From Zygnema circumcarinatum SAG 698-1b (taxonomy: Eukaryota; Plantae; Zygnematophyceae), in contig CM074817.1 in NCBI GenBank assembly GCA_037447605.1, positions 682,001 to 746,000 of the forward strand: DNA of 64,000 nucleotides, in the 5' to 3' direction. The number at the start of each line of letters is the position of its first letter. Positions within the stretch are counted from its first letter, which is position 1. Positions 1,773 to 37,834 of the stretch are shown piece after piece. The position numbers and the translations under genes are program-made. The notes beneath the pieces were generated by a model, which saw only the letters and a list, made by a program, of their open reading frames with translations, ran no database searches and was not told where the DNA came from.

Positions 1773-1868
1773 GTGGGTCCGTTTTCGTAACGCTTTCTGT
1801 GTCAGAAAAAAACAGCAGAAGGAGTTGTGACGAGTGAAGTTACCTTAGTCGACCTCATNNNNNNNNNN

Positions 1869-2265
1869 GGGGGGGGGGCATGCCCCCCATTTTTGACCGT
1901 CCGTGCCCGGGGCACGCCTCCAAAAATTTTCCCCATATATTTCGTGCCCCCCCGTGCCCCCTGTCACGTGACGCTTACCTCGTACGACCAGGCCCGGGCC
2001 GGTGACGATTGGTGTTGAGTACTGTCCGTACTTTTCATATTTTCCCGTACATGTGTACCTTTATCCGTACGTTTAGTACATTAATCTGTACTTTCTGTAC
2101 CTTCATCCGTACCGTTTTTAAAATAGTATATTCTTTTTTGGACCGATTTGAATTGCTCAATGCAGTCACGTCACGGGGCACGAAAAAGGGGCATGCCCCC
2201 CCCCAAGGGGGGGGGGGCACGTGCCCCTGGGCACGGGTCGGAGGGGGACCGTGCCCCCAACCCTA
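1869..2265. mobile_element. Second, 5'-truncated copy of the hAT MITE inside the duplicated block
   Basis: Same sequence as 561-957; the right TIR ends at 2265 and is followed by ATCTCTGT. Confidence 0.7.
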
Positions 2266-2622
2266 ATCTCTGTGCTCGTACAATTCAGCTGCTTTTAGGT
2301 TAATTTTTTTTTGTTTTTGTTGTTTGAATTGTTCCCAATTTTCAGCATCATATCAGGAGCACTGCTACACCCTTCCATCAGATAAAACATTATATTTCTT
2401 ACAGCATAGGAGTTGTCAGAAGAGAGAGAGTGAGGAGGAGGAGGAAGACAGAGGAAGGAGGGCGAGGAGGGAGGTGGAGAGGGAGAGAGTGAGGGAGGGA
2501 GGTGGGTAAAACGGTTACAGGGACAGAGAGAGACAGGGAGAGGGCTAGACCTAAAGATCGAGAGAGAAAGGGGTGTAAGGAGGGAGGGAGAGTGAAGAGA
2601 GAGCAAGGCCGCGAGGGAAGCC

Positions 2623-19664: not shown

Positions 19665-22600
19665 CTTGCTGGAGGCACAACGTGAGAGAGAGAGGGTTTA
19701 TGTGTGGGGTGTGGGGGGGAGGGGGAAGAGGGCAATTTTGCGATTATCAATGTACGAGATGTTTCCTTCCTGTGAATATGTAGCTGCGGTAGGAGCCTTA
19801 GTGGCTGGATGAAGCGTTTCATACCTGAGAGGCAGAATAGCAGTGGCCTGCGCTGCTTCAGACGGGTTTTTTGCCCGTGGAAGCTGTGACTGTAAAATCG
19901 AATTTGAAGTGCAATTGCGTAAAGTCGTGGATTTTTGCATTCTCTCCTCTTCTGGTTGAATACTGCTCCCACAATTGTTTAGTGAAAGGTTTCCACTTTT
20001 GTTCCGTTCGGTTTAATTTCGGCTGTGAACATTCAAAGCAGCGGACTGCCAAATCCTTAAATGCATGGCTGTTCTGTCTGGCAGGAAACAAGTTCATCAT
20101 CGTAAATGTAGAAACAATCAGTCACTTGCATCTAACTCGCAAATTCCGCAGCTTGCGTTTAGGAGTTATTTCTATGGTTTTCGAGGTTTATCTTCAAAAT
20201 GGGCTGATGTCTACGTGGCAGACACCAGGTCACCTTAGAGTCTTAGACACCTAAAGTTTATCACAGCAGGGTGTGGGCGTTCTTGCTGGCTGACACCTAC
20301 TTGGTGATCGTAAATTATCCAGTAGAGTTAGTGCAGTTTTAGGGTTTAAGTGATAAGGAACACAGTTGTTGCGTTTTCAAGCCTGGGGTTTCTAATGCAT
20401 CCAGTAATTCTGAAAAGGCTCCAGGAACACGATCGCGGCGGCGGGTCCACGGGTTGCCTTTATGGGGGGAGAATAGGCCCTTGAAAAGCTGTTATCGGCT
20501 GATCACCTTTGGAAGGTTGATTTGCAAAAATACACTCGAAATTCGGATTCTCCCCCACTCATTAGGGCAATGTCAGACTCAACGAAAAAAGAAGTTGATG
20601 AAGTACTTCTCTACAGGCATATCGCGATGTCACCGGAGTACTCATTTTGGTGTCAAAGTAACGAACAACTGTTTAGTCTGGCATGCTTTCTTGGTTACGT
20701 CCCCCTGGACTGAAATCCTGGAACTCAGCCACCCCTGAACAAAAAGCCTGAATCCCCTACACGTCGGCGACAAAGAGGCGACGTTTCGAATGGAGTGTAT
20801 GTAATCGATTGAGTGTGCCGCGAGCACGGGGGGATGGACCTCCACACGTTAATCGAGGCTACTTCTAGGAAGGGCTGCGTTGTTGAGCCCAGGCGTAGTT
20901 TTCCGCTCCTAGCTTTTTTCTTCTGCCCTTGGGTCCATTGCGACTAGTTTTGTTCCTCGTGGTTCCCCATGATGGATTTTGTCCATGTACAGTACATTTG
21001 ATGGCCTCGCCATGCGTGAGTTCAATGCCACATCCCTTCCGTTGATCCAATCAATGGTCCGACTCATGAAGGGTTCCATTGCTGCCCGGAAACCAAAACG
21101 TTTGAAACGTCCAAAATAAATTGTGGTACAGTTTGATCCTCTACAGTACGCAAATCATCCACGTGGCGACCGCGAGTTGGTCCTCACAATTTTTTTTTTT
21201 TTTTGTTATCGAGCAAGACATCCGACGTGGCGCGGTTTTTTTGTTTTTTTTTTGGGACCGCTTGATTGATCCCCCCGGCCTCAACTGATCCGTTTTGCCT
21301 CAAATATTTTTCAAAACTGCTTCTCCCCCCATTAGGCAGCGGCGGAAGGCAGCGGTACGCATTTGTGTAAATACTTTTCCTTTCAACATTGGGCCCATCG
21401 CAGGTCGAGAAATTTGGCCCGGTTGGCGAATTTCCGCCCGGCGGCGCGCGCGCTTCAGCCGAAGCGGCGCGCGGGCCCTCCCTCCCTCTCTCCCTCCCTC
21501 GCTCCCTCCCCCGGGAGGGAGGGGCCCTGTTAGGCCCTGAAGAAGGGGCGCAGCCTGGTCCGGCCGTCTGCATGCGCGCATCTCTGGACCGCCGTTTTCC
21601 GTATTTGATCCTTATAAATTATCATCCTTTTACTCTGCTTGGCTGCAGGAGCTGGCCTGGGCGTGTAGGGGGCGGGTGCGCTCGAGGAGACTCCGGTCTG
21701 CTTTAGGAGGAAATGGCACGGGAGAGTGAGTCTAGACCGGCGGGTTCTTGACAGGATTTCGGATTTTAGGGTTTCTGTGCATACATTTTAGTTGGGAGAA
21801 GTTCAGTTCCGGCGGAGAGGTTTGTTTGCAAGGAAGGGGAGAATGGAGGAGAGGTGGGGGAAGAGAAAGGACGATTGTGGAACGACGAAGGGTAGGAGCA
21901 TCCCGGGCGAGAAAAGGTGAAGCCTTTATGGAATCGTTATCAGAACGTTGTCGGTTTTTTATTAAGTTATATCATTGAATTAAAAAAGATCAAGGTTGAT
22001 TGGCTTCGGTCAAAGTTTTGAATATCTTGTGAATACTAGGCCAGGAGATGTGAGCGAAAATGCGCACTTTGGTCGGCTCTGGTGGCACCATTCAGATTGG
22101 CTTTTCAGGCAACTTTTCGCATGTCGCTTCATAAGCTCAGAGTCGTATGCATCCATCGTCCATCATGTTCATTCATTTATCAAGAAGGCCGTTTCCTGAG
22201 ATACATGCAGCGATTTATTCAGTTTACCGTTCCATAAAGCAGGCTGGCATTCTTCTCCTTTGGGGCTTTGATTCTTTTGGGGGGCATCAGCTCAGGACGC
22301 TTCGTTAAAACCGATACTGTTTGCGACCAGTTGCATACATCCTCATAACAAAACTTCTCTCAGAAAAGGGTTCGTTTATGCAGTAATTTCAATGTTGATT
22401 CATCTCACATATCGTCCGATGCTTTTGATGTTTTGTTGCTGATTTTGAAGAGGATGTTGTCCTGCTCATTCCGGTGAGAACTGCGAAGTGATGCTATTGC
22501 AGGCATGCCATGACTTGTTAACCAGGGATCAAGGTTCAATTTGACTGCCATAGAAATCTTCTGGTCAGTTTAATGCAATATAACTGCATTAATCAGACCG

Positions 22601-22902
22601 AATTCTGCATTGTTGGAATCGACCAGCCGTCAGTCAATGACCCTGCAACTACTAGCGTTTCAACTCTTGGCGCTCACATGCAAACAAATGCACGTCCTCT
22701 TTCCAGACGCGTTCGATTCATCTTAAACACAAACGCAATGGGTAATCGTGAACGTGACGAGATTGCGAGCGGGAGAGTAGTGCGAAGCTAAAGAAGTGAA
22801 AGGGACCATACACGGGTCAAATCTGAAACACACGAGTCTCCAGCACTCGTTTAAGCTCTTAAACCTGCGCAGAACTGAACTCAAACTTTCTGTTCTATGC
22901 AG

Positions 22903-25900
22903 GCGGAGATTGGACTCAGTCGTAGGAGTGATCCTCCTTCTTGGACTTTGCTCTACCACATTCGGCCAAACATTTCAAAAGGCGATTTTGGAGCCTCCCG
23001 AGGGAGTCTACTTTGGTGTGAACATGAACAACAGTGTGCCCCTAGCAAGCTACGCCAAGGCTATTGGCATCAACCCTGCAACCTATGTCATTTTCGTGGA
23101 GATTCCATTCCGCGATGAAGATATTGCCTCCATACGATCATTTCTTGCTCAGGTAACGGGGGATTGGCTTTATGTACTGGACATAATGTGTCATAGGGAC
23201 TGCTAATTCACAATAGCACAACCAAATCCATCCATGCCTACATGCTTGTTCTACTGTGTTTGTGGAGATGGCAATCTCCAAGTGATACCTATACTTGCAT
23301 GCGCATGCAGACATCAGGCTTTCTATGCGTTCATGTACCATATGTTCATTAGAAATTTATGCTTAGAGGGATTGGACGAGGGAGAGGGAGAGGGAGAGGG
23401 AGAGGGAGAGGGAGAGGGAGAGGGAGAGTGGGAGAGGGAGAGGGAGAGGAGAGAGGAGAGGGAGAGGGAGAGGGAGAGGGAGGAGGGGAGAGGTGGAGAG
23501 GGAGAGGGAGAGGGAGAGGGAGAGGGAGAGGGAGAGGAGAGGGAGAGGGAGAGGGAGAGGAGAGAGGAGAGGAGAGGGAGAGGAGAGGGAGAGGAGAGGG
23601 AGAGGAGAGGAGAGGAGAGAGGGAGAGGGAGAGGGAGAGGGAGAGGGAGAGGAGAGGGAGAGGGAGAGGGAGAGGGAGAGGGAGAGGGAGAGGGAGAGGG
23701 AGAGGGAGGAGGGAGAGGGAGAGGGAGAGGGAGAGGAGAGGGAGAGGGAGAGGGAGAGGGAGAGGGAGAGGGAGAGGGAGAGGGAGAGGAGAGGGAGAGG
23801 GAGAGGGAGAGGGAGAGGGAGAGGGAGAGGGAGGAGGAGAGGAGAGGGAGAGGGAGAGGGAGAGGGAGAGGGAGAGGGAGAGGGAGAGGGAGAGGGAGAG
23901 GGAGGGAGAGGGAGAGGAGAGGGAGAGGGAGAGGGAGAGGGAGAGGGAGAGGGAGAGGGAGAGGGAGAGGGAGAGGGAGAGGGAGAGGGAGAGGGAGAGG
24001 GAGAGGAGAGGGAGAGGAGAGGAGAGAGGAGAGGGAGAGGGAGAGGGAGAGGAGAGGGAGAGGGAGAGGGAGAGGGAGGAGGAGAGGGAGAGGGAGAGGG
24101 AGAGGGAGAGGGAGAGGGAGAGGGAGAGGGAGAGGGAGGGAGAGGGAGAGGGAGCGGGAGAGGGAGCGGGATAGTGGAGTGAATTCGTTTGGATACACGG
24201 AACGAACTAAAGGTGAGGGCTTCCACCAGGACTCACTCTGCCCCATCCTTCTTTCTCCCCCTGCTCGCACGTGTGACAGGTGGCGCAAACGGGGGGCATG
24301 GCCATGGTGACCGTGGAGCCCTTTCTCGGCCTCGAGACGGTGACCGACAGCGTGTGCAGGGCGGTGGTGGACATTCTGCAGCAGTACGAGCTGGCAGGAG
24401 TGTCCTTCTTCATCCGCTTTGCGCATGAAATGAACGGAGCATGGTCAGCATTCCACCAGCTTAGCAAATTCATACGCCAGTTTCCTACATTTTGACACCC
24501 TAGGTTACCATTCTATAGGAGTTTGGTACTGTATTCGACAGCTTCAACCAATGACATGATGATGTTGCTGCAATCTGCTGAAACAAATCTTGACAATCTG
24601 AAACCTTGCAAACTTGAACCTTACGCTACCATTCTTTGCTTCCAGGTACCCTTGGTGCCAGCAGCCCACATTGTACAAAAAAAAGTTTCGCCTTATGGCC
24701 GAATACGTTCACAACTACACATGCAGAACAGCCATGGTTTGGGCCCCGAATAACGGCGGAGGGTATCCATTTTCTGGGGGGGAATACGAATGCCGCGGTC
24801 CAAATTCAGCATTCTACACTCCACCTGGAAACTGCGCGGACTTTCAATACTTGGACACAAACAGCGATGGGGTCCTGACCATGGCAGACGACCCTTATCA
24901 GCCGTACTATCCGGGCGATGATGTGGTCGACTGGGTTGGCCAAACAATATACCATTGGGGGCGGCAAGAGCCTTGGAAGGAAAATGAAGTTTCGGAGCCT
25001 TACGCCTTTTATGAGAAGGTAAAAGGAAACATTGAGAGTTTTGAAGTTTTGGAGGCTTAATGGTTTTTAAGGTGTAAAAAAAAAATTTAAAAAAGTTTTA
25101 ATCGTGTTCAATTCAGTCCACAACCGAGCAATTCAGATCAAAGCTCGTCTCTAATTGGACTAGAACTGACATCCATGAAACACTCCTCCCTCCCTTGCTT
25201 CTCGCAGCTCACCGGAGTTTATGATGGCGAGGATGGAGATCAGTCAGAGATTCCGGATTTCTATGCACAATATTGCGGGGATGATGTGCATATGAAACCG
25301 ATGGTTATTCCAGAAACCGCTGCTCTGTTCAATCTCAACTACACAGGGGGAGAGAAAGAATTTGATATCAAGTACGCATGGTGGACGCAGGTCAGTCTCA
25401 CAAAAAAGACTTTAGCAACTATAAACGAATCCTTACGAATGCTCAAAAAGATTGTAGCGTGATCTAAGTACGTTGATCCTCGTCTTGTTTTACAGGTATT
25501 CAACGTGCAGGGGGAGACAGCAAATGCAGTGGACATTTCTGCGAGGCTTCCTCGAATCAAAAGCATCAACTGGTTTGACCAGATGAAGCCTGAAGTACGT
25601 GCATGAGTTCAACCCAAAAGAAACTCCAATCAAGAAATACCCAAAACAAAGCCGAAAAAACAGACCGCGAACAAAGTCCGAAAGCTTCGACACCCCCACT
25701 TTAAAAACAAACCATATCTTCAATCTCAGACCTTTAAAAAGCCCTAAAAAATGTGACCTTCTTGCAGAGACATTTTCCAAGTTAATGACGAAATGACTGA
25801 CCCCCCCACCATCTGCAGCGTCCCCTGTTCTCGCTGCACTTTCTGACGATCGTTTCATAATCTCCGCAGTCGCAAATCGGCGGGCAAATCGCCGACTGGA

Positions 25901-28900
25901 CGTTTTCGAACAACCCCATCGTTCGCGCAGCGTTCGTTCAGCACCTGCAGGTGATCCCCCGCCCCCACCTCTGCCATGCCATGCCATGCCATCACCATGC
26001 GCATGGCATGTGGCGATGATGTATGCGCGTATGTGTGGATGGCGCATGGCATGGGCATGCGGCCATGCGCGATGGATGGCATCATGACCATCGCGATGAG
26101 GTCATGCCGGCGCGCTGCTAGTTGTTGGCGCGCGGGAGGGAGAGAGGGAATTGCTGTAGCGAGAGGGCGAGAGGGCGAGAGAGAGACGGAGTCTTATTAG
26201 GATGAGAGCGAGAGAGATAGAGGCGTATGATGCGGCGCTTGACGGAGAACTCAGAGGAGACAGAGAGGCAATGGAGAGCGTGGGAGGGCGGTGGAATGGA
26301 CGAGACATGCAGGAATATGCATGCGACGATGGGAAGAGCGGGCGGGGATTACAGAGGGAGAGAGAGAAAGAGAGGGACAGAGAGGGAGGGGGTAGAGAAG
26401 GACATCAATGCCTGCACGAGAGTGAGGAGCTCGCTCATCATCCTTAGAACATTTGCTTGGAAGGATTGGCCAGAAAAAAACAGGAACTAAGTGCTGGACT
26501 TTCCTGCTCTATGCTGCACTTTCTTTCTTCTCCCTCTTTCCTTCTCTCTCGAGCAGAGACAATCGTCAAGTGGGACGAAGTATTGGAAGTTTTTGGAAGA
26601 CCTGCATTGGGATGAAGACCTTGTCGACCCCTCGGGCGCTCTCCAACACATCATTCTCTACCGCGGTAAACTAAGAATTGTTCGAGCTGAAAAGTACTTA
26701 TACCTGCATGATATTGGTGGAAATATTTCATACTCTGGCTAGCTGAAGTTTTTGAAAAATTTAAAGTACACTTCATTCGACTATGCATGTCGTCTCGTTT
26801 CATTCTGTAAGAATCATGCTTTGATGAGATGAGGTCGTGGGTTGGGCTTTCAAATTGCAAGGTTTTGAGGCTTTCAATATTTAAGTTCTTGGAGAGTTTT
26901 TAAGGACGAGTCAGCAATTATAGACTTTGAATGGTTCTACCAGGAGGTTTACGTTTAGCCGGCCTTTTAAATTATGTGAGACTTATGCGGTTTTGGCTTT
27001 AAGCTTGCAATGCGTGCCAGGGATTTTAGAAATATAAAGCTTCTGAAGTTTTGACCTTTTTAGAGCTCGAGTATTTTGGATTTTACACCTAGGTAGTCTG
27101 ATTCCAAGGCTGAACTTTTTTTATTTTTCTGCAGCTAGATTCTGATCCTTTATCGGGTTTTACAATGTGCTTATAATCGTAATCATTGTCGTTTTAAAAA
27201 CTAGCTTTGTTCCTGTATGCAGGAAAAGATACAATTTCTGTCCGTGTCCAAGGACCAACGACTGCGAGCGTCATTGGAGTAGACCTTTTCAGGTACAATC
27301 CTCAATCTTTTTTTCTTTAATCTTTAGAACGGGGTTATTTTTGGAATTATTTGTGAAGTTTCTCCAACGTGATCCGACATTTTGTGCCTCCTATTTTCTG
27401 TCCTGCGACTTGTCTGTTGCAGTATCGATGGCGATTACCACACGGTGATAGAAAAGGTCGGAGCCGGACACGTTACTGTGAACAGCAGTACAGAACTGCA
27501 AGTTGTGAACATAGAACTGGTGTATAACAGAACCGTAAAGTGGACCCAAGGGACGCTTTACTACAGCACATGGATACGACCGATCAGCGGAAATCCTTAT
27601 AACAGGTATTTGCAATGAGTCTATTGAGAACAGAGAAGTAGAGAGGGAGGGAGATAGAGAGAGACGGCGGGTGATCTCTAGAGTAAGTGACAGCGAGGAA
27701 GGAAGGACGAGGGAGGGGGGACGGAAGAGAGATCCTTTACCGCCATACGTAGACTTTTCATGTTCTGCGGTTTCTAGAATATGCATGAAATTAACCTATA
27801 CAATGCGATGTACGCTGCGGTTTGTTGTGCAGATCAGACGAGTGCGCTGTGCGTTCACCATTCTATGGCGTGTACGCGGAGGCGGGTTCCATATTCATGG
27901 TGCACGGACTGGTGGCAGTCATGTTGGGGTGGGAAACCCTGGCAGTGTGTTTAGCGGCACTCCTCTTCCTCTCTCTCGCCGTTTTCTTCATCCGCCAGCT
28001 GCGCTTCTACCCCCGCATGAGTGACGTCACCGCTGGAGCGTTCCGATATGCAGCAACACAGGTAAGCTCTGCCTTGGTTGGAAGAATGAAAATGTTAAGA
28101 CTTTGAGGTTTGCATGCTAATCTTACCCCAAAATTACCCGAAATGTGAAGAGTCAAAGGCCCCTAAACACTTCAACATGCTCAAGACTCTTATCCGTTTT
28201 TGCTCCCTCTCCTTCTCTCTCTCCCACTGCGCTCCTCATCTCTGCGTGACGCAATGTTCAGGGCAACATTGCGGTGCTGGAAGCGATTTCAAAGAAGAGA
28301 AATTTTAATGTGGACTGCCATGTGGGGGGCTTCACAGCTCTCCACGCAGCCTGCATTCAAGGACAGGTGTGCCACAAACCCAAACCTTCAAAATCTCAAA
28401 CTCCAAAAACCTCAGGCCCAAGAAGGCTCTAAAAAACCAAAGAAAATTGACTCCAGACGTCCCCCCTCCCCCCTCTTTCTTGTTCTTTCCTTTTCCTTTA
28501 TTCCGCCTCGTCTTCATTTTCTGCAGGAGGAAGTTGTGGAATGGCTTCTTGAAAGGGGTGCTTCAGTTCACAAAGTAAAAAATGATGACTGGATGGACAC
28601 TCCTCTCCACTATGCAGCTGCCAACGGACATAGAAAAGTTGCCCAAGTCCTCCTCTCGCACGGAGCAGACCCCCAAAGAAAAAATTATCAAGACTGTATT
28701 CCTTCAGAACTCGCCGCAATGTCCGGTTATAAAGACCTCGCCACCTTTCTTTTAACAGCAGAAAAAGTGGAACCCCCGGCAAAGGAAACGGTTTCTAAGT
28801 TTTCAACCAAATTTTCAATATTTAGGTCAAGGAAAAGCGTCCCAAACCCGGAACTGACGGAACGAGAACGGAACGGAACCGGTGGCGCAAGCATGGAAAG

Positions 28901-29252
28901 AGGGAGATCATTGAAATCTGGATGTCAAGTGAATGACTATGATGCTGCAAATGCCTCCCATGCTGGAGAAGCAGATCAAAGTGCAGACGGAAATTTTGCG
29001 GAAGAAGTTTCACAATTGCAAAGTGTTCTGCATCAGTTTAAGGCAGCAGCTGCCACTTCGAGCGGAAACCAATCGGAAGGTTTGGACATGCGAAAATTAA
29101 ACCTAATTGAGCCAATGCCTGTTTTGTCGGAAGAGGGCATTTCAAACGGAGCGGCACCAAGCCCCACTTCTGGGCTTTCTTCTCCTCACGATTTCCTCGC
29201 AAAAAAGGTGCTGAGTTTTGACTCTTTGTTTGGGAAGAATAGGTATAAATGA
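22903..29252 (+). CDS. GH26 glycoside hydrolase + beta-rich linker + transmembrane segment + ankyrin repeats (5' end uncertain; possibly continues into the GT2 gene)
   Basis: Signal-like VVGVILLLGLCSTTFG. GH26 motifs IRFAHEMNGAW|YPW (acid/base Glu), VWAPN.G.GYPF, DPYQPYYPGDDVVDWVG, KPMVIPETAA (nucleophile Glu), KSINWFD..PE|SQIGGQIADWTF. Phase-consistent exons continue to the TM LAVCLAALLFLSLAVFFI and ankyrin repeats GFTALHAACIQGQ|EEVVEWLLERGA..DTPLHYAAANGHRKVAQVLLSHGAD. Confidence 0.82.
23378..24168 (+). repeat. About 790-bp nearly pure-purine (GAGGGA/GAGAG)n microsatellite in a GH26 intron
   Basis: Read directly; it generates the ERERE/GRGRG/PSPSP pseudo-ORFs at 23234-24426. Confidence 0.97.
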
Positions 29253-29501
29253 GCTTTATATGACACAGCTTGAATTCTTTGTCATACTAACCCATTCTTC
29301 GTCTTATTGAACCTGAATGCTTTTTACCTTTATGGATTTGTTGAATAGCAGAAAGATAGTCTTTCAACCTTCAAGCACCTTTTGCAGGTGCAAGTGGGTC
29401 TTTAGGGCTTTCGCATGATGTGTTTCATAAAATTTAGAAGGCAACCAGGAATTGGGGATTAGGGAGTTATATTGAACTCGTTTCAAGTGGATGAAAAGCA
29501 G

Positions 29502-32500
29502 ATGAAACCTCAGGAGGTCGAAGAATACATTTCGAGGGGATTTGACGGAGCCGGAACTCCTGGAACACAGTTAAAGCCGGGGACACGGCTATGGCGATTT
29601 TTTGCAGTCGTCTGCCAAGTAAGTCTGTCTGTCTGTCTGTAAGTTTTATTAGCTGGGATAGTTTGAGATTTGTGAATGTTGGTATGTTTGATTTTTACAG
29701 GTTAGGGCAGGTTGTTGAACTAATTCTTGGGCATGCACTAATGTGTGCATTTAGAGGCGGCTTTCCGGGTTTCGGAGACCGTTAGGGTTTGCTAGGCGAG
29801 CTCTTTCTCGCTTTTTTCGTTCCTCTCTATTTCTCTCTTACCCTTCCCTTTTAATTTTGTAAAATGATATCCGGCGGCTCATGCAGGGGACGGGTTTGAT
29901 CTACTTTGCATGGCGGGCCGTTCGGAGCTTCAACGACAGCCAAGTGTGGCTGAGCGTAATCTTCTTCGTCTGCGAATTTGTCACTTTTGTGCCGTCCTTC
30001 TTCTTTTGCATGGAGGTATCTCTCCGTCTTTCTCTCTGTCTCTCTCACTCTCGCTCTCTATCTTTCTCCTTGCCTTTATTTTGAACAAACTTGTTCATTA
30101 AGTTTTTGTGGAGGGGGGGAGTGTGGAAGGGGGAGAGAAGGGAGGCGAGGAGGAGCTGGGGAGGGGAGAGTGCCATGGAGGAGGAAGGGTGGGAGGGGGA
30201 GGGCGAGAGGGAGGGAGGGAAGGAGAGGGAGAGAACAAGGTCCAGTTTGTTATTAATTGAATTTTCACCTGAATTTATTTATCATTTTTATTACGGCCTT
30301 ATTTGGTTGTGTATATTATTTTCGTTTCTGCCTGAACGATCATCTCCACGCAAGGTCTATATGCAAGTCATTCGTCTTACCATTTCCCTAAAACATCAAT
30401 CAACCTTAGGGCTTTTCATGTCCTACCCACTAAATGCTTTCTTTAAAGATTTTTCTTATTGAAACCATATTCTCCCTGCGATGATCATCCATTGGGCTTG
30501 TCCATTGGCATGTCCCAGGTTTGGTCGCCGATTGAGAGAGAAAAGCGGCTCCTTTCAACGATGGATCTAAGGCCGGAGGACTATCCGAGTGTGGACATTT
30601 ACGTCGTCTGCTACAACGAGCCGGTGGATATCATTGAAGCGACTGTTTGTGCAGCCCTTAATTTGAAGTAAAGTTCCTCACAGTTGCTCCCAAGTCCCCC
30701 TAAAGAGCTCGACACCTCTTAAACTTAACAAAATCTGAAAGCCTTAGCCATATAATCTCCAATTTTGAAGCTTTGAAATCCTTGCAAATCCTAAAACCCT
30801 TGGAAAGCCGACAACCCTAGAAACGGCATTCATTTGCTCGCTCCCCATCTCGCCCCTCTAGTTTCTCCCTTTCTTTTTTTGTCTCCCCTCTTTTCTCTCT
30901 CCTCCTGATTGATCCATGTGGACTTTGCACGCAATCTGGGTTGTGTGCAGATACCCAGCAAACAAGCTTGTGGTGTATGTCCTGGACGATGGGAGGCGGG
31001 AGGAGGTGAAGGCGATGTGCCACAAGTTGGAGTTCCAAGGCCGCCTCCTCTCACGAAAGGGGAGGGGGAGAGGGAGAGGGAGGGAGCAGGCGCAGCTCGT
31101 CTACACCACGCGTACTAAGGTTAGCCTCTTCTCTTACCTCGCAACCCCTTGAACGTGCGAACCTCATCGCATGTCGCACTCTCTCGTTTCCTTTCTCCCT
31201 GTTCCATCTAAAAGCTCTTCTAACTGAAACTCTAATGCGTCCTCCTTCCCTCCCTCGACCCACTCCCTTTCCCCCTCGACCTCGTGTCCCTCTTCCCTCC
31301 TCCCTCCATACCCAGAACCCTAAGGGCTTGCTGAAAACTCTGTTCCCTGAACCTGCTGTAAAGCCTGCGCTTCTGTAGGTTGCCTGTTGATTCTTGAGCC
31401 TTCAACTCTCCGATCGCTGAACCCCAGACTCTAGAAGCCTCTGCATTATGAACCTTGAACCCTGAACCTGAACCTTTAACCTTCGCACCTGGAACCCTAA
31501 CTTCTGAACCCTAGACCGAACCCCCAACCCCTACCGCCAACCCCTTACACTCAAATCCCAACACCCCAAACCCGAAACTCCTTCCCCCTTCTCCCAATCC
31601 CCTACACCCTCCCCTCTTAACCCCACCTTCTCAATCCCTACACCCTACTTCCTTACCCCCTTGACCCCGTTCCCCCTCTTCCCTCCCCCTCCCCCCCTCC
31701 CTCCCCCCCTCCCTCCCCCTTAGACCATGGACCATGGAGCCTAGAGCCTTAACGCTAGAGTCTAGGATATAGAGGTCAGCCCTCCCCTCTGAGCCTTCTG
31801 CTGTGCCCCACCCCGGCAGGTGAAGGGCGTGGCGCACCACGCAAAGGCGGGCAACATCAACAGCGCTCTGCTCAAGGGGGCGCGGCGAGGGGGCGCGTTT
31901 GTGGCCGTACTCGACTGCGACATGATCGCACAGCCCGAATTCCTGCAAGCCGCGCTGCCGCACTTTTTCCGGAAGGGGAGAGAGGGGGGAGAGGGAGGGG
32001 AGGGAGGGGAGGGAGGGGGATGGCGGCTCAAGCCCAAGGCAGCCTTCCTGCAGAGTCCCCAGGTGATGACTCAAAACACTGATTTTGGTTTACAGCATTG
32101 GGATTTGGGGGAACCCTAAATGCGCTACGGAATTCTAAAGGTTTGACTGCTCTACGGCTTTCGAAACTCATACAGACCTTACAACTCTGCAACCCTAAAC
32201 GTCTGACGATGTCAAAACCTAAAATTGACCGTAAGCACGGTGAATTAAAGGCAACTCTGAGAACTTGGAAAGCAGCTTCCTACCTGCTTTTTGTAGTTGT
32301 CTGGACCCTCATTAACGCTCAAAATATTTGCAAAACAGGACTTCTACAACGTTGAGAAGAGCGACCCCATGGGACATAGAGCTGCGTTCTTTTACGGTCC
32401 CATGATGCAAGGCCGCGACGGACTGGGAGCGTGTCCATGTGTTGGAACTGGAGTCATTTTCCGTAGAGACGCTCTCATCTCCATTGGAGGACAAGCGTAC

Positions 32501-35500
32501 GGCTCCATCACGGAAGATTACAATTCTGCAATGGCCCTCATGGGGGCAGGTGAGGGCGCTTTGTTTTTTTCTTTTTGACCCGTTGAAATTATGAAACTAT
32601 GGGTTTTGAGGAGTGGCAGGTTTTTGTTTAGTGAAGGTTTTGTTAAGGAAAGCACAAATTGGGACGAACCATGCAGGGTTTTCCTCCATGTATTTGAATG
32701 TGAGACTCATTTACGGGCTTGCTCCGGACGATATCGACTCGGTGCTTAAGCAGCGATTGCGCTGGGCGATGGGCTCTCTGCAGGTGAGAGAGAGAAAGAT
32801 GGACAAAGGAGGGGGAGAGAGGAAAGGGTGAGAGAGTATGATGGTAAGAGAGCGAAACAGACAGACTGACAGAGCGACTCCCCTCCGGAATTATGACTTG
32901 CTCAGAGATTTCAGGGAGTTGAGAGCTGTATGTGTCAAGAAATTGCAAAATTATGTTTGGAAGTTTTGATGTCCAGATTCTAATCTTGGGGCCTTGATTT
33001 CTAGATTCTTTGTCGGGACAACCCGCTGCTGAAGCCCGGCCTCACTTTTGCACAGTCTCTACTTTTCTTCCAGTCAGCTTTTCAGGTGTGCTTGAAGCCT
33101 ACCCAAATGCGCAACCCAAAACTTTATGAACCTAAAGCCCCTAATACCAATGGCAATCTTATGGCGTGATGACGTTAGAAACCCTTCATCTGTATACTTA
33201 TTCAGCTTATTCAGCCCTTGAAGGCTTTGCGATTCTATGATGCAAACCCTAAACTCTAACACACTTATAGAGGTTCCATGTAAGGCCAAAACAACTGAAC
33301 TTCCTAAAGCAGTAACTATGCGTTTTTTAAAGTGCCACTAACCACCTAAAGTTGCTTTCTTTGCTTCGGACAGCTCCTTGTTTGATCTGGTTAGCTACTT
33401 TGGAGAGGTCTTGAAAGGTTTTGGAGGATCTTACGGTTGAGGATTTTGATTCTTTTATTTCCGGCCCGTGAAATGCAGTATGTGTTGGCCATACCGACAA
33501 TTCTGATGGCTCTTGTGCCAATCATTTACCTCTTTTTCTCCATACCCCCTATTTACGCCCCAATTTACGAGTTTTGCGCGTTTTTCTTCGCTTACTATGC
33601 GGCGAATCGATTAATGCTGTTCCACGCACACCGCGGAATACCAAATAAGGTTCAAATCGCAATCTGAACCCTATCTGGCTTGTTAATGGGAGCGAGAGGG
33701 GGGTGGAGGGAGAGGGAAGCGATTCGCTGAAGGAAGGAGAGGACAAGAAAGGGAGAGGAGCAAGAGAAAATTGGGGGGGGGGGGGGGGGGGGGGGGGGNN
33801 NNNNNNNNCGCGGGAGAGAGAGAGTTAGAGATAGAGATAGAGAGAGGAGGGTGGGGGAGGGAGGGGGAAGGGGCTAGAGGAGGGAGAAAAGGACGATGTG
33901 AGAATGATACGGTTGTTGGAGAGGGGGAGGAGGTAGGCTGTGGGTTAACTTGACTAGGCTTGACTGGACGTGACTTTACTGAACTTTGACCTGATTATAT
34001 ATCTCTGTCCAGGGTTTGGAAATGTGGAGAGGGTCCCAAATGTGGCTGTGGAATGCCCCCAACAATGTGTTGGCGTGCTGGAAAGTTTTCACCACCGAGT
34101 TTTGGATTTTCCGACTGCTGGGATTCGGCAAGGTCAGTCCAAACTACTATTTAAAGAAAATCAAAGAGAATTTACTGAAATTGGAAGTATGGAGCGGAAG
34201 TAAAACTTGAGTTGTACAACTTTAGACTTTCAAACTCTTAAAATCGGTTCTTCCTTTGCATATATTGTAAAAAACATTGATACGCTAAGAGCCATGAACC
34301 TTTCTTACTAATCCATTTGGATGTTATCGCAGATTGGATTTACTGTCACGAGCAAAGAGAAGCAGAACGATTGGAAGAAGGCGTTTCTATGTGTTTGGAT
34401 GTTCCTTTTGTACTATGCGGCGGTGATGGGTGGAGTGGCGTACAATATCGTCTATATCGTGAGGGGCGACCTCGACCAATACCAAGTTGCATCGCAGGTA
34501 TCGTCAAGATGTCTCTCTCTCTCTCTCCGTCTTTCTACTCCTTCCTGCCTACCCTTTCTCTCTCCCCTTCTCGCTTTTGTTTGCTCTCCCTAACTCTCTT
34601 TCTTTTCCCTCCCCCTTCTCTCCACCCTGCCTCCTCCCTTTTCACATCTCTCTCTCTCTGCCCCCTCGCCACTGTCATTTTCCGCACTTATCCTTCCCTC
34701 CGCTTTCCTCCCTCTCCCTCGTTTTCTCTCAACCCTTTTCCTCTATTGTCGTCAATCCCTCTCTCCCTCGCCCCTCCATCTCTCCCTTTCTATCTCTCTC
34801 TCTACCTCCGAATCTCTCTATTTTGCTCTCCCTTCTCTCTCTCTCAATCTCTCCTTCTCTTTCCATCTACCATCATCCATCCATCCATCTATCCATCTAC
34901 CTCCTCTTCCTCTCCCTCTCCCCCCCTCTCAACCTCTCCCTCTCTTTCTTGCTCCCCCTCTTTCTCCATCTCTCCCTTTTCTCTCCCCTCTTTTCCCAAA
35001 ACCTCTCCTCCTCTCTCGCCCCCTCCCTCCCCCTCTCTCTCCCTCCCTCACCCTCTCTCCCTCTCCCTCCCTCCTCTCTCCCTCCCTCTCTCTCCGCGTG
35101 CAGGCGGTGGCCCTTGCGTGGGGCCTCCTTGTGTGTCTAATGCTGCTCCCCCCTGTGGCGGTAGCCTTCCCCCTTTGGCGGCGGCCCCGCCCGGGCCGCG
35201 TCCTCTGGGAGGAGAGCCTCTCGCAGGGCGTGCCCACCCCCGCCCGCCAACCCTCGGGTGGGCTTCTAAAACCCTAAACCCCCTGCATCGTTACAATTTC
35301 AAACCCTTTGAAGTTTGGCCTGAAAAACCTCTATCCCCTTTCCCCCCGCCCCCCCTCCCTCCTCCCTCCCCTGTAAAGGTCCTGAAGCTCTAAAAACTTG
35401 AAGGCATACACAGCTCATTTCTTTTTGGGGGGTAGCAGCATTCATGCGCTCTGTCACGTCACCTCTCGCTCGGGTTGGTAATCGCCTTCGCCGAGTTGCT

Positions 35501-37834
35501 TTTTCGGATCCGTTGGGAGGAGAAGAGGGAGCAGAACCTTCGAATCCTTATAACGGAAGGAATTCGCAGCATGTGTCGGACGTTCCGTCGCACACAACGG
35601 TGGTGCAGGTGGAGGAGAGGGGGGAGGAGGTGGCTGCAGAGGGAGAGGCGGACCTCTCTCTGCCAAAAAGACCTCCAGTGATCAAAGTGGATAGACATGC
35701 TAGGGAGTTTTCTGGACAATTATACGCGGTAAAGTGCCACACTAACACTTGGGGTATGAAATTATATAAATCATTATTATATTCTGGATAGCATGGTGAC
35801 GATGAGGGAAGGGAGAGCGATCGGTGAGTGGAGAGGAGGGTGGAAGAGAGGGGGAGAGCGAGTGAGTATCAGTGTATCAGTGCCAAGTATCAGTGTTTGT
35901 AGTGAGTGAGAAAAGTTGAATTTTTCACTTCCGTATGAGTTCCATTCAAACGATCTGCACCTTCTATACATGTAGAGCCCACTCTTGATATTGTGGGGGA
36001 AATAAGGCTCAGGATGTGTTGTATTTGCGTCGTAATTTCAGGGTTTCAATTCCTTTTTTGCAGAATTCGTATGTTGTTACACCCTCGGCACCTGAATATC
36101 CACGCTTCCCTGGGCACGTAAGTGATAATCTTTCTGCCTTGGTTGGAGCAGTAGAGAAAGTGGCTGATTATAATGTAAAACATTCAGTCCGTAAATAGAG
36201 GAAGAAACTGCTCCTCGATGCATTGAACAGGTGTGACGGGCCGAATCTCGATGTACAAGTGACTTTGGACACCTGCGGATTTCCATGCTTCAGTCAGCCG
36301 TAGTTTCTGTCTAACAGATCCCACTGTAACGAAGTGCAGGTAAACGAGTTGGCAACAACTGCCCGTCCGGCTCGAGTGGTGGAAAGTGTCGCTGCCGACG
36401 ATGACATGGATGCGCAAATGGAGATTAGCGCCATTTACAGGTATGCCCCCTACTCTCCCCCCTCACTCACTCACTATCTCTGACTCTCTCTCCCTTTCTC
36501 GAACCCTCTTATCCCTTTCTTTTTACCCTTTCTCTCCCTGCTTCTCTCATTCTCTTGCACTCTTGCCTCCTCGTCCCCCCTCCCTCACCCCCGCCCCCCC
36601 TCTCATATTCTCCTCTATTTCTTGTGCACTCTCACTTTTTCCACTCCACTGAAAGCTATCAACTTTATCCGCATAACATTCCACGATGTACAGCATTTAG
36701 GCTACTTTTCTGCGACCTACTCGTCAAATTTCCCTGAATCCAGCATCCAAACTCCTCCGGCCCTCCCCCCACCCCCTTTTTTTCTCTCTCTCTCTTTCAC
36801 AGCCTTGCGACGGGAGGTATCAGCATTCCCAATTCCGGTCTTCTCTCTGTCCCTTCCTCCGCCCCCATTCGTCTCTCCTCCCTCTCTCCTCTCCAAAGCG
36901 CTTTCTCTTCCTTCCGACTCATCGCGGAAACTGCCCAAAATTCCATTCAGCTTCACGGCAGCTCCGTTATTTCAAGCACTGTTGCTTCCCCTCGAATTGT
37001 AACGGAATCTCAGCATGGAGAGAAGGCCCAACTTGAACCAAGTTATGGGCCCGGAGAAGGAGAAGCTACCACGGAAACTGAGCTGAGGAGGGGCCGTCCT
37101 CCCACTGTCTCACTACCGCAAATGGGACCCTCTCTCTCACAAAACGGGCGACCCTCTCTCATAACACCTGGTGAGGTCTTCAGATCCATAAAATCCAACT
37201 CTCTTCACTCTAATGATATGAATTGAACACCCGAAGGCCACTTGTTTAGTTGCAGATGGATAGTTATTTGTAATGTGTGGTTTTTGTGCTGATGTCACGA
37301 GTATACATTGACGACTGTACTTTTCCCTTCCCTGTGCAGCCCGCTTGGATCTTACCGAAGAAGAGATGAACTTCGAAAACTTCAGGTGCGATCACTTGTA
37401 CCTCTTTTGATATTTCAACGGTTTAATTAATTCCGAGAGTTGGAGAGTTTTTAGGGTTCTCAAAAAAGTCTCGCCTAAATCCAGGCTTCATGATGCCCCT
37501 TCATGGGGCTTACTTTACACGCTCTTCGTTCATTGCTCAAGTTTCAATACCCCTAAATCCCTAAAATTCCAAATCCCGACACTGACATTTTCCCGATATG
37601 CGGCAATTCAGGACGTACATGACAAGCCGAATTGTCTATTCGGACACAGCGAGCCTCTCTGCGAAGCCCAAATTCGACCTCAAACGGCCTCTTTGGGACA
37701 ACCACATGTTCGCTTTCGTGAATGGACTTTTCCTCGTCGGCCTCGCCGCGGGCGGCACGCTGTACACGGTCTTCCTGGCCACAAATCGCGACTGGTTCGG
37801 AATCCATGCTGGGCAATCCTTCTCGCTGCACTGA
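29502..37834 (+). CDS. Cellulose synthase-like GT2 processive glycan synthase, bacterial BcsA-like type
   Basis: Two N-terminal TMs, then YPSVDIYVVCYNEP, VLDDGRR, HHAKAGNIN, VLDCDM, FLQSPQ|DFYN, CVGTGVIFRRDAL, SITEDY, QRLRW (D,D,D,QxxRW), further TMs and a long C-terminal tail ending ...GIHAGQSFSLH* at 37834. No plant P-CR/CSR domains or zinc finger. C-terminal exon borders are uncertain. Confidence 0.88.

What the first reader, a model, noticed from the sequence alone, without database searches (positions are those of the whole stretch)
22903..37834. Possible single giant protein: GH26 hydrolase - TM - ankyrin - BcsA-like GT2 synthase
Seen: the GH26/ankyrin ORF stops at 29252 and the GT2 frame opens at 29463 (ATG 29502), same strand. 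The gap can be bridged in frame by phase-0 GT-AG introns: donor AAG|GTGCTG at 29208, a perfect branch point TACTAAC at 29285-91, acceptor 29350-51, a 36-nt exon (KDSLSTFKHLLQ), donor 29388, acceptor 29461-62, then GVILNSFQVDEKQMKPQ...RLWRFFAVVCQ. The topology is self-consistent: secreted GH26 outside, TM, ankyrins inside, two TMs, GT domain inside. Established: bacterial synthase systems pair a GT2 with a processing hydrolase (BcsA with BcsZ), and GH26 includes beta-mannanases, lichenases and beta-1,3-xylanases. Inference: a self-contained polysaccharide synthesis/trimming machine with an ankyrin scaffold, an architecture I do not recognise from plants. Even unfused it is a tight synthase-hydrolase pair.
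Basis: partly seen in the sequence, partly recalled or inferred. Interest (0 to 1): 0.87.

Follow-up and report, generated by a model that had tools for sequence, protein, structure and literature searches.

The report
Fused hydrolase-ankyrin-glucan synthase gene, RNA-confirmed
This green-lineage locus really is one gene: spliced RNA and full-length relatives in three other algae show a single membrane protein of about 1,530 residues with a GH26-type glycan-cutting domain outside the cell, ankyrin repeats inside, and a bacterial-type (BcsA-like) beta-glucan synthase, an architecture I found in no paper searched.

Summary
The central claim holds, but the proposed splicing is wrong in detail. 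RNA-derived contigs from 4 runs (3 studies) join 29207 directly to 29502 through one 294-nt GT..AG intron, in frame. One contig runs spliced from the ankyrin exons into the GT2 catalytic exons.

The N gap (33799-33808) lies in intron 33650-34012, which is spliced out in all 4 runs. Orthologue alignments are continuous across that junction.

A 25-exon model (22901-37834) gives one open frame of 1,529 codons. It aligns end to end with P0199, a 1,534-aa single ORF on a full-length mRNA contig from another organism (47% identity). The same GH26-TM-ankyrin-GT2 order occurs in P0263 and in Chlorokybus atmophyticus (P0265).

Klebsormidium, many chlorophytes and a chytrid have TM-ankyrin-GT2 without GH26.

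- The GT2 is closest to bacterial BcsA (E 6e-43, against 3e-23 for plant CesA), has every processive-synthase motif, and lacks PilZ.
- The GH26 domain is closest to the Clostridium lichenase Lic26A and sits among mostly metagenomic, apparently bacterial sequences.

Function (a synthase with a tethered trimming hydrolase) is inferred. Still unresolved: the GH26-to-TM join by RNA, the start codon, and the exons between 35258 and 37611.

The parts
22454..22473 (+). Candidate first coding exon (ATG at 22454, 'MLSCSF', donor CCG|GTGAGA, phase 2). Prediction only.
   Evidence: the best-scoring ATG-plus-donor combination that fits the phase of acceptor 22903. No RNA or orthologue support.
22903..23152 (+). 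Exon with a signal-peptide-like segment (RRRLDSVVGVILLLGLCSTTFG) and the start of the GH26-like domain. The model script starts at 22901 only for codon register.
   Evidence: tblastn of P0199, P0263 and P0265 onto 22961-23158.
23153..24279 (+). 1.1-kb intron filled with (GAG/GA)n microsatellite. It is the source of spurious 270-367-aa ORFs on both strands.
   Evidence: Flanking donor CAG|GTAACG and acceptor ACAG|GTG.
24280..25950 (+). Five GH26-like catalytic exons: 24280-24443, 24646-25018, 25208-25390, 25496-25594 and 25870-25950. They carry the HEMNG acid/base motif and the IPET putative nucleophile.
   Evidence: Splice sites and phases. Homologue tblastn. 854 relatives found with exon C. 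Profile against PDB: Lic26A, E 1.9e-8. RNA runs hold 0.89-1.00 of the sampled words of 24280-25600.
26557..27605 (+). Two exons (26557-26693 and 27423-27605) of a beta-rich 'mid' ectodomain between GH26 and the first TM. Boundaries are predicted.
   Evidence: Exon enumeration scored by codon usage. The YWK..L.D...DE.L.DPS motif is shared with P0199 and P0263. tblastn of P0263 619-654 onto 27505-27606. The same GH26+mid module occurs in metagenomic, probably bacterial, proteins P0179, P0182 and P0183.
27833..28061 (+). Exon encoding TM1 (TLAVCLAALLFLSLAVFFI) and the start of the first ankyrin repeat. Its 3' end is spliced to 28262.
   Evidence: In all 4 runs the loose end before 28259 equals window 28029-28058. 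Hydropathy.
28262..29207 (+). Ankyrin-repeat exons 28262-28366 and 28527-29207, followed by a poorly conserved linker of about 150 residues.
   Evidence: RNA joints 28366|28527 and 29207|29502. Pfam Ank E 6e-13, Ank_2 E 1.4e-11.
29208..29501 (+). The decisive intron: 294 nt, GT..AG, phase 0. It joins the 'GH26/ankyrin ORF' to the 'GT2 ORF'. If retained, translation stops at 29250-29252.
   Evidence: the joint is seen in X1, X2, X3 and X5 (depth 14.8-54.3). An unspliced 352-nt contig (29178-29529) has depth 0-15, similar to other introns of the gene. Splice sites.
29502..30015 (+). Exons 29502-29618 and 29887-30015. They encode the two TM helices that precede the GT domain.
   Evidence: Joint 29618|29887. 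The 30015|30519 join is inferred from 278 nt of contig X1 record 1 and from splice sites. Translation.
30519..33649 (+). Seven exons of the BcsA-like GT2 catalytic domain and the following helices: 30519-30667, 30951-31119, 31820-32062, 32339-32549, 32677-32783, 33005-33085 and 33479-33649. Motifs DDG, DCD, TED and QRLRW are present.
   Evidence: All joints. Continuous translation. Motifs. PDB hits.
33650..34012 (+). Intron that contains the assembly gap (N at 33799-33808), flanked by poly-G and GA-rich low complexity.
   Evidence: joint 33649|34013 in 4 runs; orthologue continuity.
34013..34497 (+). Exons 34013-34132 and 34333-34497: an interface helix, the FTVTSK (FxVTxK) gating-loop motif, and a TM helix.
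   Evidence: Start of the 34013 exon. The remainder rests on splice sites and orthologue tblastn.
35104..35257 (+). Exon with a further TM helix (VALAWGLLVCLMLLPPVAV). The donor is uncertain. Exon(s) between 35258 and 37611 are unresolved.
   Evidence: tblastn of P0199 and P0263 onto 35098-35217. Several exon chains score about equally.
37612..37834 (+). Last exon: a conserved C-terminal TM helix and the stop codon (37832-37834).
   Evidence: tblastn of P0199, P0264 and P0265 onto 37598-37807..

Best explanation
Window 22.4-37.8 kb holds one intron-rich nuclear gene of about 25 exons. It encodes a polytopic membrane protein of about 1,530 residues.

Domain order: signal peptide; a GH26-like (beta/alpha)8 hydrolase plus a small beta-rich domain on the outside; one TM helix; three ankyrin repeats and a disordered linker in the cytosol; two TM helices; a cytosolic BcsA-type processive GT2 domain; its channel-forming helices; a tail with a last TM helix.

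Shown: the Ank-to-GT2 and TM-to-Ank joins are spliced in frame in RNA; the whole architecture is conserved as a single ORF in three other organisms; the motifs of both enzymes are present.

Inferred mechanism: the GT2 polymerises a beta-glucan (most likely beta-1,4-glucan from UDP-glucose) and extrudes it through its own channel. The N-terminal GH26 ectodomain is tethered by TM1 beside the channel exit. There it trims, releases or edits the nascent chain, the role BcsZ plays for BcsA and KORRIGAN plays for plant CesA. The ankyrin repeats take the regulatory or scaffolding place that PilZ holds in bacteria.

Inferred history: the TM-Ank-GT2 core is old in the green lineage. The GH26+mid module, whose nearest relatives are mostly metagenomic and apparently bacterial, was fused on once in an early streptophyte.
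For: RNA evidence:
- One search shows the in-frame joint 29207|29502 in 4 runs from 3 studies.
- X1 record 1 (2,231 nt) runs spliced from 28259 to 31974 and carries 718 nt further upstream.
- X3 record 11 carries 1,335 nt upstream of 28259. On my exon model that reaches exon 24280-24443.
- In all 4 runs the loose end before 28259 equals the TM exon end.

Gene model:
- the RNA-supported part is a 721-codon open frame, and the full model is 1,529 codons without a stop.
- a single BLASTP alignment of model residues 28-1511 to P0199 residues 41-1503 (47% identity), and 43% identity to P0263.

Orthologues:
- P0199 is one ORF (668-5272) on a 5,924-nt contig with UTR-like ends.
- GH26+Ank+GT2 also occur together in P0263 and in Chlorokybus P0265. 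These were the only full fusions among proteins of 844-2,684 aa.
- the GT2 tree and the GH26 tree give the same branching for the four fused proteins. The streptophyte GT2 clade has SH-aLRT 96; the GH26 clade has 80.

Enzyme identity:
- BcsA E 6e-43 against plant CesA 3e-23.
- DDG, DCD, TED, QRLRW and FTVTSK are present.
- the GH26 profile hits Lic26A at E 1.9e-8 with HE(M/A)NG aligned. In the AlphaFold model of P0199 the barrel blocks are mostly at pLDDT 85-95, and its best Foldseek hits are Lic26A structures (TM 0.75).

Precedents for coupling:
- bacterial BcsA-PilZ proteins with a GH8 domain.
- a bacterial GT2-GH26 fusion with this same GH26 subfamily.
Against: - Exons 26557-26693 and 27423-27605 are predicted.
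- The start codon and the exons between 35258 and 37611 are unresolved.
- Contig depth is a poor measure of isoform ratios. An unspliced 29178-29529 contig exists in 3 of 4 runs.
- No biochemical datum exists for any member, so product, hydrolase specificity and ankyrin role are all inferred.
- The Pfam GH26 score is marginal: 15.5 bits for the window exon, and 16-22 bits for orthologues against a cut-off of 20.2.
- The nucleophile Glu was not aligned to a solved structure residue by residue.
- Klebsormidium and all chlorophyte relatives work without the GH26 domain, so it is not essential to the synthase.
- The linker could be cleaved after translation.
Confidence: 0.8

Rival explanations
1. 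There are two neighbouring genes: GH26-TM-Ank ending at 29252, and a GT2 synthase starting at ATG 29502. The joined contigs would then reflect read-through transcription or assembly chimeras.
For: The unspliced form has a stop at 29250-29252 and the next exon begins exactly with an ATG. An unspliced 352-nt contig is present in 3 runs. The tool itself warns that a contig across two genes does not prove a single transcript.
Against: The junction is a canonical spliced GT..AG joint in frame in 4 runs, at 3-4 times the depth of the unspliced form. In X1 the bin inside the intron (29300-29499) has zero depth. Other introns of the gene show the same low unspliced signal, so this intron is not special. 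Three orthologues have a continuous ORF across the equivalent linker. Klebsormidium and the chlorophyte relatives all have Ank covalently N-terminal to the GT2.
Confidence: 0.04
2. It is one gene, but regulated intron retention at 29208-29501 gives two products. The retained form would yield a stand-alone GH26-TM-Ank 'receptor-like hydrolase'. Internal initiation at ATG 29502 would yield a GT2-only synthase alongside the fusion.
For: Retention creates a clean stop 14 codons into the intron, and the downstream exon starts with ATG. Unspliced k-mers are present at roughly 20-35% of exon depth in X2, X3 and X5.
Against: Comparable unspliced signal is seen over other introns (30100-30499, 31300-31699, 32100-32299). 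It therefore looks like pre-mRNA or DNA carry-over. The signal is zero in X1. A GT2 starting at 29502 would lack the conserved TM-Ank module that every relative keeps. Internal initiation on a retained-intron mRNA after an upstream ORF of about 840 codons is unlikely in a eukaryote (general knowledge).
Confidence: 0.08
3. It is one fused protein, but the GH26-like ectodomain does not process the enzyme's own product. It might instead be a wall-glycan sensor or binding module, a remodelling enzyme for a different polymer, or a transglycosylase, with the ankyrins relaying a signal to the synthase.
For: The GH26 domain is dispensable in Klebsormidium and chlorophyte relatives. The same GH26 subfamily is fused in bacteria to quite different partners: OpgC/acyltransferase-3, PQQ dehydrogenase, and an unrelated GT2. 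An earlier first-reader note read it as a receptor-like hydrolase.
Against: HEMNG and the second Glu (in the PE(T/V)AA motif) are invariant across 29 aligned relatives, and the window's own model carries both motifs. That argues for catalysis rather than binding only. Recurrent fusion or adjacency of this GH26 type with membrane polysaccharide-synthesis or modification proteins fits action on nascent exopolysaccharide. The GH26 and GT2 trees are congruent, which fits co-evolution.
Confidence: 0.2

Closest known systems
Bacterial cellulose synthase BcsA with its endoglucanase BcsZ (GH8), including natural BcsA-PilZ-GH8 fusions
   Same: The GT2 core is the best solved-structure match (Rhodobacter BcsA E 6e-43, E. 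coli BcsA 7e-39). It shares the D, DxD, TED, QxxRW and FxVTxK motifs. The pairing logic is the same: a cytosolic synthase and an extracytoplasmic endoglucanase. Several bacterial hits carry Glyco_hydro_8 (PF01270) on the same chain as BcsA-PilZ.
   Different: There is no PilZ/c-di-GMP module. Ankyrin repeats sit N-terminal to the GT domain instead. The hydrolase is GH26, not GH8, and it is N-terminal behind its own TM helix. Only about 30% identity to BcsA. No BcsB partner was looked for.
Tunicate cellulose synthase CesA with a C-terminal GH6-like domain
   Same: It is a eukaryotic BcsA-type GT2 cellulose synthase covalently fused to a glycoside-hydrolase-like domain of bacterial ancestry (PMC7464555 abstract).
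   Different: The tunicate domain is GH6 at the C-terminus, whereas this one is GH26 at the N-terminus. Tunicate CesA has no ankyrin repeats. [quoted passage not shown]
Plant rosette CesA with the membrane-anchored endoglucanase KORRIGAN (GH9)
   Same: A membrane-tethered endo-beta-glucanase outside, working with a GT2 synthase at the plasma membrane (general knowledge; KOR co-expression with CesA is noted in PMC9915684).
   Different: In plants these are separate polypeptides. Plant CesA is a weaker match (E 3e-23 to 3e-18). A Pfam scan of the orthologues reports no zinc-finger or other CesA-specific N-terminal domain, only GH26, Ank and GT2 families.
Unnamed TM-ankyrin-GT2 family of green algae, for example Klebsormidium nitens 'cellulose synthase catalytic subunit' (P0264). 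It is possibly the BcsA-like 'CslP' group of Feng et al.
   Same: 46% identity over 953 residues from TM1 to the last channel helices. P0264 falls in the same starred streptophyte clade in the GT2 tree. Members occur in Micractinium, Picochlorum, Nannochloris, Scenedesmus, Chlorella sorokiniana, Tetradesmus, Symbiochloris and a chytrid.
   Different: These relatives have only a short extracellular N-terminus instead of the GH26+mid ectodomain of about 500 residues. Whether the family equals CslP could not be tested, because no CslP reference sequence was available. The Zygnema-genome preprint searched (PMC9915684) does not contain the word ankyrin.
Clostridium thermocellum Lic26A (GH26 lichenase, PDB 2BV9/2CIP)
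   Same: It is the best sequence-profile hit (E 1.9e-8) and the best fold hit (Foldseek E 8e-14, TM 0.75) for the ectodomain. The acid/base Glu in HE.NG is aligned.
   Different: Only about 18% identity. The algal domain has long insertions and an added beta-rich domain. Specificity is unknown: GH26 mannanases, beta-1,3-xylanase and a mixed-linkage xylanase follow closely in the fold ranking.

Membership tests
CAZy GH26 (Pfam PF02156) | Pfam Glyco_hydro_26 score at or above the gathering cut-off (20.2 bits) | tested here: inconclusive
   The window exon 24614-25060 alone scores 15.5 bits. Full-length orthologues score 20.8 (P0199), 22.2 (P0263) and 16.1 (P0265). The spliced window protein could not be submitted by reference.
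CAZy GH26 (Pfam PF02156) | Significant profile similarity to solved GH26 enzymes | tested here: met
   Profile A1 (15 relatives) against PDB: Lic26A E 1.9e-8, and GH26 mannanases 1.6e-4 to 6e-3. All 22 listed hits are GH26 enzymes, or chimeras or designs built on them.
CAZy GH26 (Pfam PF02156) | (beta/alpha)8 clan GH-A fold, nearest to GH26 structures | tested here: met
   AlphaFold model of orthologue P0199:35-530 has barrel blocks mostly at pLDDT 85-95. The top 24 Foldseek PDB hits are GH26 entries or constructs that contain one, with Lic26A first. This was tested on the orthologue (47-59% identical), not on the window protein itself.
CAZy GH26 (Pfam PF02156) | Catalytic acid/base Glu in the H-E-x-N-G motif | tested here: met
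   HEMNG is at model residues 132-136. It is invariant in A2 and aligned to the HEANG of Lic26A, chain residue 109.
CAZy GH26 (Pfam PF02156) | Catalytic nucleophile Glu on strand beta-7 | tested here: inconclusive
   An invariant Glu (E270 in A2 numbering; IPET in the window) lies on a predicted strand. HMMER did not align it to the Lic26A nucleophile, and no structural superposition by residue was available.
BcsA-type processive GT2 (cellulose synthase superfamily) | D, DxD, TED and QxxRW motifs plus the FxVTxK gating loop | tested here: met
   DDG 973, DCD 1049, TED 1156, QRLRW 1194 and FTVTSK 1331 in the spliced model. The exons carrying the first four motifs are RNA-supported.
BcsA-type processive GT2 (cellulose synthase superfamily) | Closer to BcsA than to plant CesA or Csl | tested here: met
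   P0199:830-1390 against PDB: BcsA 6e-43 and 7e-39; plant CesA 3e-23 to 8e-16; CslF6 2.5e-8. The window exon alone hits both at 5e-4 to 7e-3.
Bacterial BcsA proper (c-di-GMP regulated) | C-terminal PilZ domain (PF07238) | tested here: not met
   There is no PF07238 in P0199, P0263 or P0265, nor in any algal hit. It is present in most of the bacterial hits listed in the same search.
Land-plant rosette CesA | N-terminal RING zinc finger and CesA-specific domains | tested here: not met
   The N-terminus is GH26-TM-Ank. The Pfam scan reports no zinc-finger family. The P-CR and CSR insertions were not examined separately.
Ankyrin repeat | Pfam Ank/Ank_2 above the cut-off | tested here: met
   Ank E 6.2e-13 (48.6 bits) and Ank_2 45.2 bits in 28200-29252. 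The preceding repeat is split over exons 27833-28061 and 28262-28366.
CslP (BcsA-like Csl of green algae, Feng et al.) | Clustering with ZcCslP1 in a GT2 phylogeny | not tested
Mesotaenium and Closterium GT2s form a separate starred clade outside the Ank-GT2 group in my tree. Family description from PMC9915684.
Tunicate CesA-GH6 fusion | GH6-like domain at the C-terminus of the synthase | tested here: not met
   The hydrolase domain is GH26 and N-terminal. The C-terminus is a short tail with one TM helix.

The most novel reading that the evidence does not exclude
The protein is not a cellulose synthase. It would instead be a one-polypeptide synthase-editor for a non-cellulosic beta-glucan, for example a mixed-linkage (1,3;1,4)-beta-glucan. 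That would fit the ectodomain's nearest characterised relative being a lichenase. The tethered GH26 would set chain length or release the polymer, and the ankyrin repeats would couple output to a cytosolic partner. This would be a streptophyte-algal route to such glucans independent of CslF/H/J, built from bacterial parts by domain fusion before the Chlorokybus split.
Probability: 0.12. Interest if true: 0.85.

Novelty: new variant of a known kind. Interest (0 to 1): 0.62.

Why it matters
Why endoglucanases are needed for glucan synthesis (BcsZ with BcsA, KORRIGAN with CesA) is still debated. A natural 1:1 covalent fusion, conserved from Chlorokybus to this organism, argues that the hydrolase acts at the channel exit on the nascent chain. 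It also offers a single-gene system in which to test this by expressing the protein, mutating either active site, and measuring product length and yield.

The locus also documents three further points:
- An ankyrin-bearing BcsA-like synthase family spread through green algae and a chytrid, which is annotated only automatically.
- A GH26 subfamily that in bacteria is repeatedly fused to polysaccharide-synthesis or modification membrane proteins.
- A probable bacterial-to-algal domain acquisition at the base of the streptophytes.

For annotation, gene callers are likely to split or truncate such loci. The Klebsormidium model starts at TM1, and this locus has a stop just inside the key intron.

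Tried and rejected
- A fused relative among the 150 best GH26 representatives: none has Ank or GT2 by BLASTP, and seven long ones carry other domains. The fusions appeared only when long proteins were searched with a proxy query.
- P0001, the best GH26 hit (65% identity over 121 residues): it lies on a dense, bacterial-looking contig and is not an algal orthologue.
- The bacterial GT2-GH26 fusion P0207 as a possible ancestor of the whole fusion: its GT2 has no BLASTP similarity to the algal GT2, so only the GH26 part is related.
- GH26 exons upstream of the Klebsormidium gene: none in the 2.8 kb available before the contig end.
- GH26 genes next to the Nannochloris Ank-GT2 genes: none, only a tandem triplet of Ank-GT2 genes.
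- ESM Atlas search with a 70-aa GT2 exon: only generic GT2 fragments, uninformative.
- PDB search with single window exons: weak hits (E 0.1 for GH26, 5e-4 for GT2). Profiles and orthologues were needed.
- Literature: six full-text searches found no paper describing GH26-ankyrin-GT2 or ankyrin-GT2 synthases in algae.
- Exon chain 35258-37611: several chains score about equally, so it was left unresolved.
- Start codon: the only nearby ATG (22897) is one base out of frame with the signal-peptide frame. A 20-nt upstream exon at 22454 is a guess.
- The window's own annotated protein or transcript did not appear in any protein search, so no same-species full-length record could be checked.

Full report
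**Observation**

The window is intron-rich eukaryotic DNA of about 50% GC, with GA/CT microsatellites in its introns. On the + strand between 22.9 and 37.8 kb lie short coding segments, in this order: a divergent GH26-like domain, a hydrophobic helix, ankyrin repeats, and a cellulose-synthase-type GT2.

The frame-2 ORF stops at 29250-29252. The same frame reopens at 29463 with an ATG at 29502. AAG|GTGCTG is a donor at 29207|29208.

**RNA test of the junction and of the gap**

Ten runs labelled with the same organism were listed for this stretch. They are Logan contigs of runs flagged 'RNA?' or '?'. The canonical spliced joints they contain show that they derive from cDNA.

All four runs join 29207 to 29502 through one 294-nt GT..AG intron. 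Both exons are in frame 2 and the intron length is a multiple of three, so the reading frame runs ...FLAKK|MKPQEVEEY... without interruption.

One X1 contig of 2,231 nt runs spliced from 28259 to 31974, that is from the ankyrin exons into the GT2 catalytic exons. Nine further joints define the GT2 exons. Concatenating the RNA-supported exons 28262-33649 gives a stop-free frame of 721 codons.

An unspliced contig over 29178-29529 exists in three runs at depth 10-15, against 32-54 for the spliced form. Similar unspliced signal covers other introns of the gene, and in X1 the bin inside the intron (29300-29499) has zero depth. I read this as pre-mRNA or DNA carry-over rather than a specific isoform.

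The assembly gap at 33799-33808 lies in a poly-G/GA tract inside intron 33650-34012. All four runs remove this intron. Orthologue alignments are contiguous across the junction. The gap is irrelevant to the protein.

**Upstream half**

In all four runs, the sequence lying just before 28259 equals window 28029-28058. This is the end of the exon that encodes the TM helix, so TM-to-Ank is also RNA-supported.

Further upstream I had no reads. I built exons from canonical splice sites, phases, a codon-usage score and homologue tblastn. The nine exons from 22982 to 28061 form a continuous frame.

Contig lengths fit this model. X3 record 11 has 1,335 nt upstream of 28259, which on the model reaches exon 24280-24443. 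This remains an inference. The same runs hold 0.89-1.00 of the sampled words of 24280-25600, so the GH26 exons are present in those libraries.

**Whole model and orthologues**

A 25-exon model (22901-37834) translates to 1,529 codons with no internal stop.

A direct search with the largest GH26 exon found 854 relatives. None of the best 150 carries Ank or GT2, and the best hit sits on a bacterial-looking contig.

Because the word-indexed protein search only sees proteins of similar length, I used a long GH26 homologue (P0018) as a proxy query. This recovered P0199, a 1,534-aa protein with GH26-like, ankyrin and GT2 domains. It is encoded as a single ORF (668-5272) on a 5,924-nt Logan contig, which looks like a full-length mRNA. 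P0199 maps collinearly to the window exon by exon at 31-80% identity. It aligns to my model in one BLASTP alignment covering model residues 28-1511 (47% identity).

Searches seeded with P0199 found the same full architecture in P0263 (1,725 aa, a EukProt Trinity transcript) and P0265 (2,015 aa, Chlorokybus atmophyticus). These three were the only full fusions among proteins of 844-2,684 aa.

Relatives with TM-Ank-GT2 but no GH26 are common:
- Klebsormidium nitens ('cellulose synthase catalytic subunit', 1,360 aa);
- Micractinium, Picochlorum, Nannochloris, Scenedesmus, Tetradesmus, Symbiochloris and Chlorella sorokiniana;
- a chytrid.

No GH26 exons lie in the 2.8 kb upstream of the Klebsormidium gene before its contig ends. 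None lie beside a Nannochloris tandem triplet of Ank-GT2 genes.

**Trees**

In a quick maximum-likelihood tree of the GT2 region, the window protein groups with P0199 and P0263 (SH-aLRT 96). Together with Chlorokybus and Klebsormidium they form a streptophyte clade (96), separate from a chlorophyte clade (99). Bacterial BcsA was used as the outgroup.

In a GH26 tree the four fused proteins form one group (support 80) with the same internal branching. That group is nested among metagenomic, mostly bacterial-looking sequences.

This fits one fusion event early in streptophytes, with loss or mis-annotation in Klebsormidium, and a bacterial source for the GH26 module. The unnamed metagenomic rows are not proven to be bacterial, and support for the GH26 clade is modest.

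**What the domains are**

GT2:
- The motifs DDG, DCD, TED, QRLRW and FTVTSK are all present.
- The best solved relatives are Rhodobacter and E. coli BcsA (E 6e-43 and 7e-39), well ahead of plant CesA (3e-23 or weaker) and CslF6.
- There is no PilZ domain.

GH26:
- The Pfam score is marginal.
- A 15-sequence profile hits only GH26 enzymes, or chimeras or designs built on them, in the PDB. The lichenase Lic26A is best (E 1.9e-8), with its acid/base Glu motif aligned.
- An AlphaFold model of the orthologue ectodomain is confident over the barrel, with blocks mostly at pLDDT 85-95. It is poor over the following beta-rich 'mid' domain.
- Its best Foldseek hits are Lic26A structures. GH26 mannanases, a mixed-linkage xylanase and a beta-1,3-xylanase follow.
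- Both putative catalytic Glu residues are invariant in a 29-sequence alignment, and the window's own model carries both motifs.

In bacteria the same GH26 subfamily is fused to OpgC/acyltransferase-3 proteins, to a PQQ dehydrogenase, and, in a Mycobacteriaceae MAG, to an unrelated GT2 followed by a second GH26 gene.

**Mechanism (inferred)**

Hydropathy gives the following picture:
- a signal-like N-terminus;
- TM1 at residues 526-544;
- a strongly hydrophobic helix at 892-910, and a weaker one at about 858-880 that I read from the sequence (it falls below the hydropathy threshold), both before the GT domain;
- several helices after the GT domain;
- a conserved last helix.

I propose a BcsA-like synthase-translocase whose own N-terminal ectodomain trims or releases the nascent beta-glucan. 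The ankyrins would serve as the cytosolic regulatory or scaffold module.

Precedents for covalent synthase-hydrolase coupling are bacterial BcsA-PilZ-GH8 proteins seen and tunicate CesA with a C-terminal GH6-like domain (PMC7464555). The polymer made is unknown. Cellulose is the default guess, and the lichenase-like ectodomain keeps a mixed-linkage or other beta-glucan open.

**Novelty**

Feng et al. (PMC9915684) describe BcsA-like Csl families (CslP, CslN) in streptophyte algae. That text does not contain the word ankyrin. Six full-text searches found no description of a GH26-ankyrin-GT2 or ankyrin-GT2 synthase.

The proteins exist in public databases with automatic names only. I therefore class this as a new variant of a known kind, namely a processive GT2 synthase coupled to a hydrolase.

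An earlier first-reader note (s1-358249, untested) reports a second such locus elsewhere in this genome.

**Limits**

- Only 28100-34099 was laid with reads.
- The start codon, exons 26557-26693 and 27423-27605, the 30015|30519 join and the chain between 35258 and 37611 are predictions.
- Structure and PDB comparisons used orthologues or profiles, because a spliced window protein cannot be passed by reference.
- No function has been measured.

Noticed in passing
window 23153-24279 and 34498-35103: Introns made almost entirely of (GAG/GA)n and CT-rich microsatellite. They create long spurious ORFs (up to 367 aa) on both strands that a naive ORF scan would list as genes.
   Followed up: partly
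window 30277-30281: Three RNA-derived runs (X2, X5, X3) agree on an inserted T after 30277 and A>T at 30281, inside an intron. This is either a strain polymorphism or a small assembly error.
   Followed up: no
L004:7239-11278 (Mycobacteriaceae MAG, GCA_051646185.1): A bacterial GT2(N-terminal)-TM-GH26(C-terminal) fusion of 1,006 aa (P0207), immediately followed by a second GH26 gene. The GH26 is the same subfamily as the algal ectodomain, but the GT2 is unrelated to the algal one.
   Followed up: partly
proteins P0210-P0262: A large set of proteins of about 820-870 aa, those with names being actinobacterial, combine Acyl_transf_3/OpgC domains with this GH26-like domain. That suggests a general role of the subfamily beside membrane polysaccharide-modifying enzymes.
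   Followed up: no
L006:2362-23042 (Nannochloris sp. 'desiccata'): Three TM-ankyrin-GT2 genes lie in tandem within 21 kb, with no GH26 neighbour.
   Followed up: partly
protein P0170 (JGI 'Picre1' entry in EukProt): A 712-aa protein from a eukaryote protein collection (JGI code Picre1, probably a chlorophyte) with two tandem GH26-like domains of the same subfamily. It groups in the tree with two unnamed metagenomic sequences.
   Followed up: partly
   Followed up: no
window 22897-22903: The only ATG near the signal-peptide-like segment is one base out of frame with it. Either a tiny upstream coding exon splices onto 22903, or the assembly has a 1-nt indel here.
   Followed up: partly
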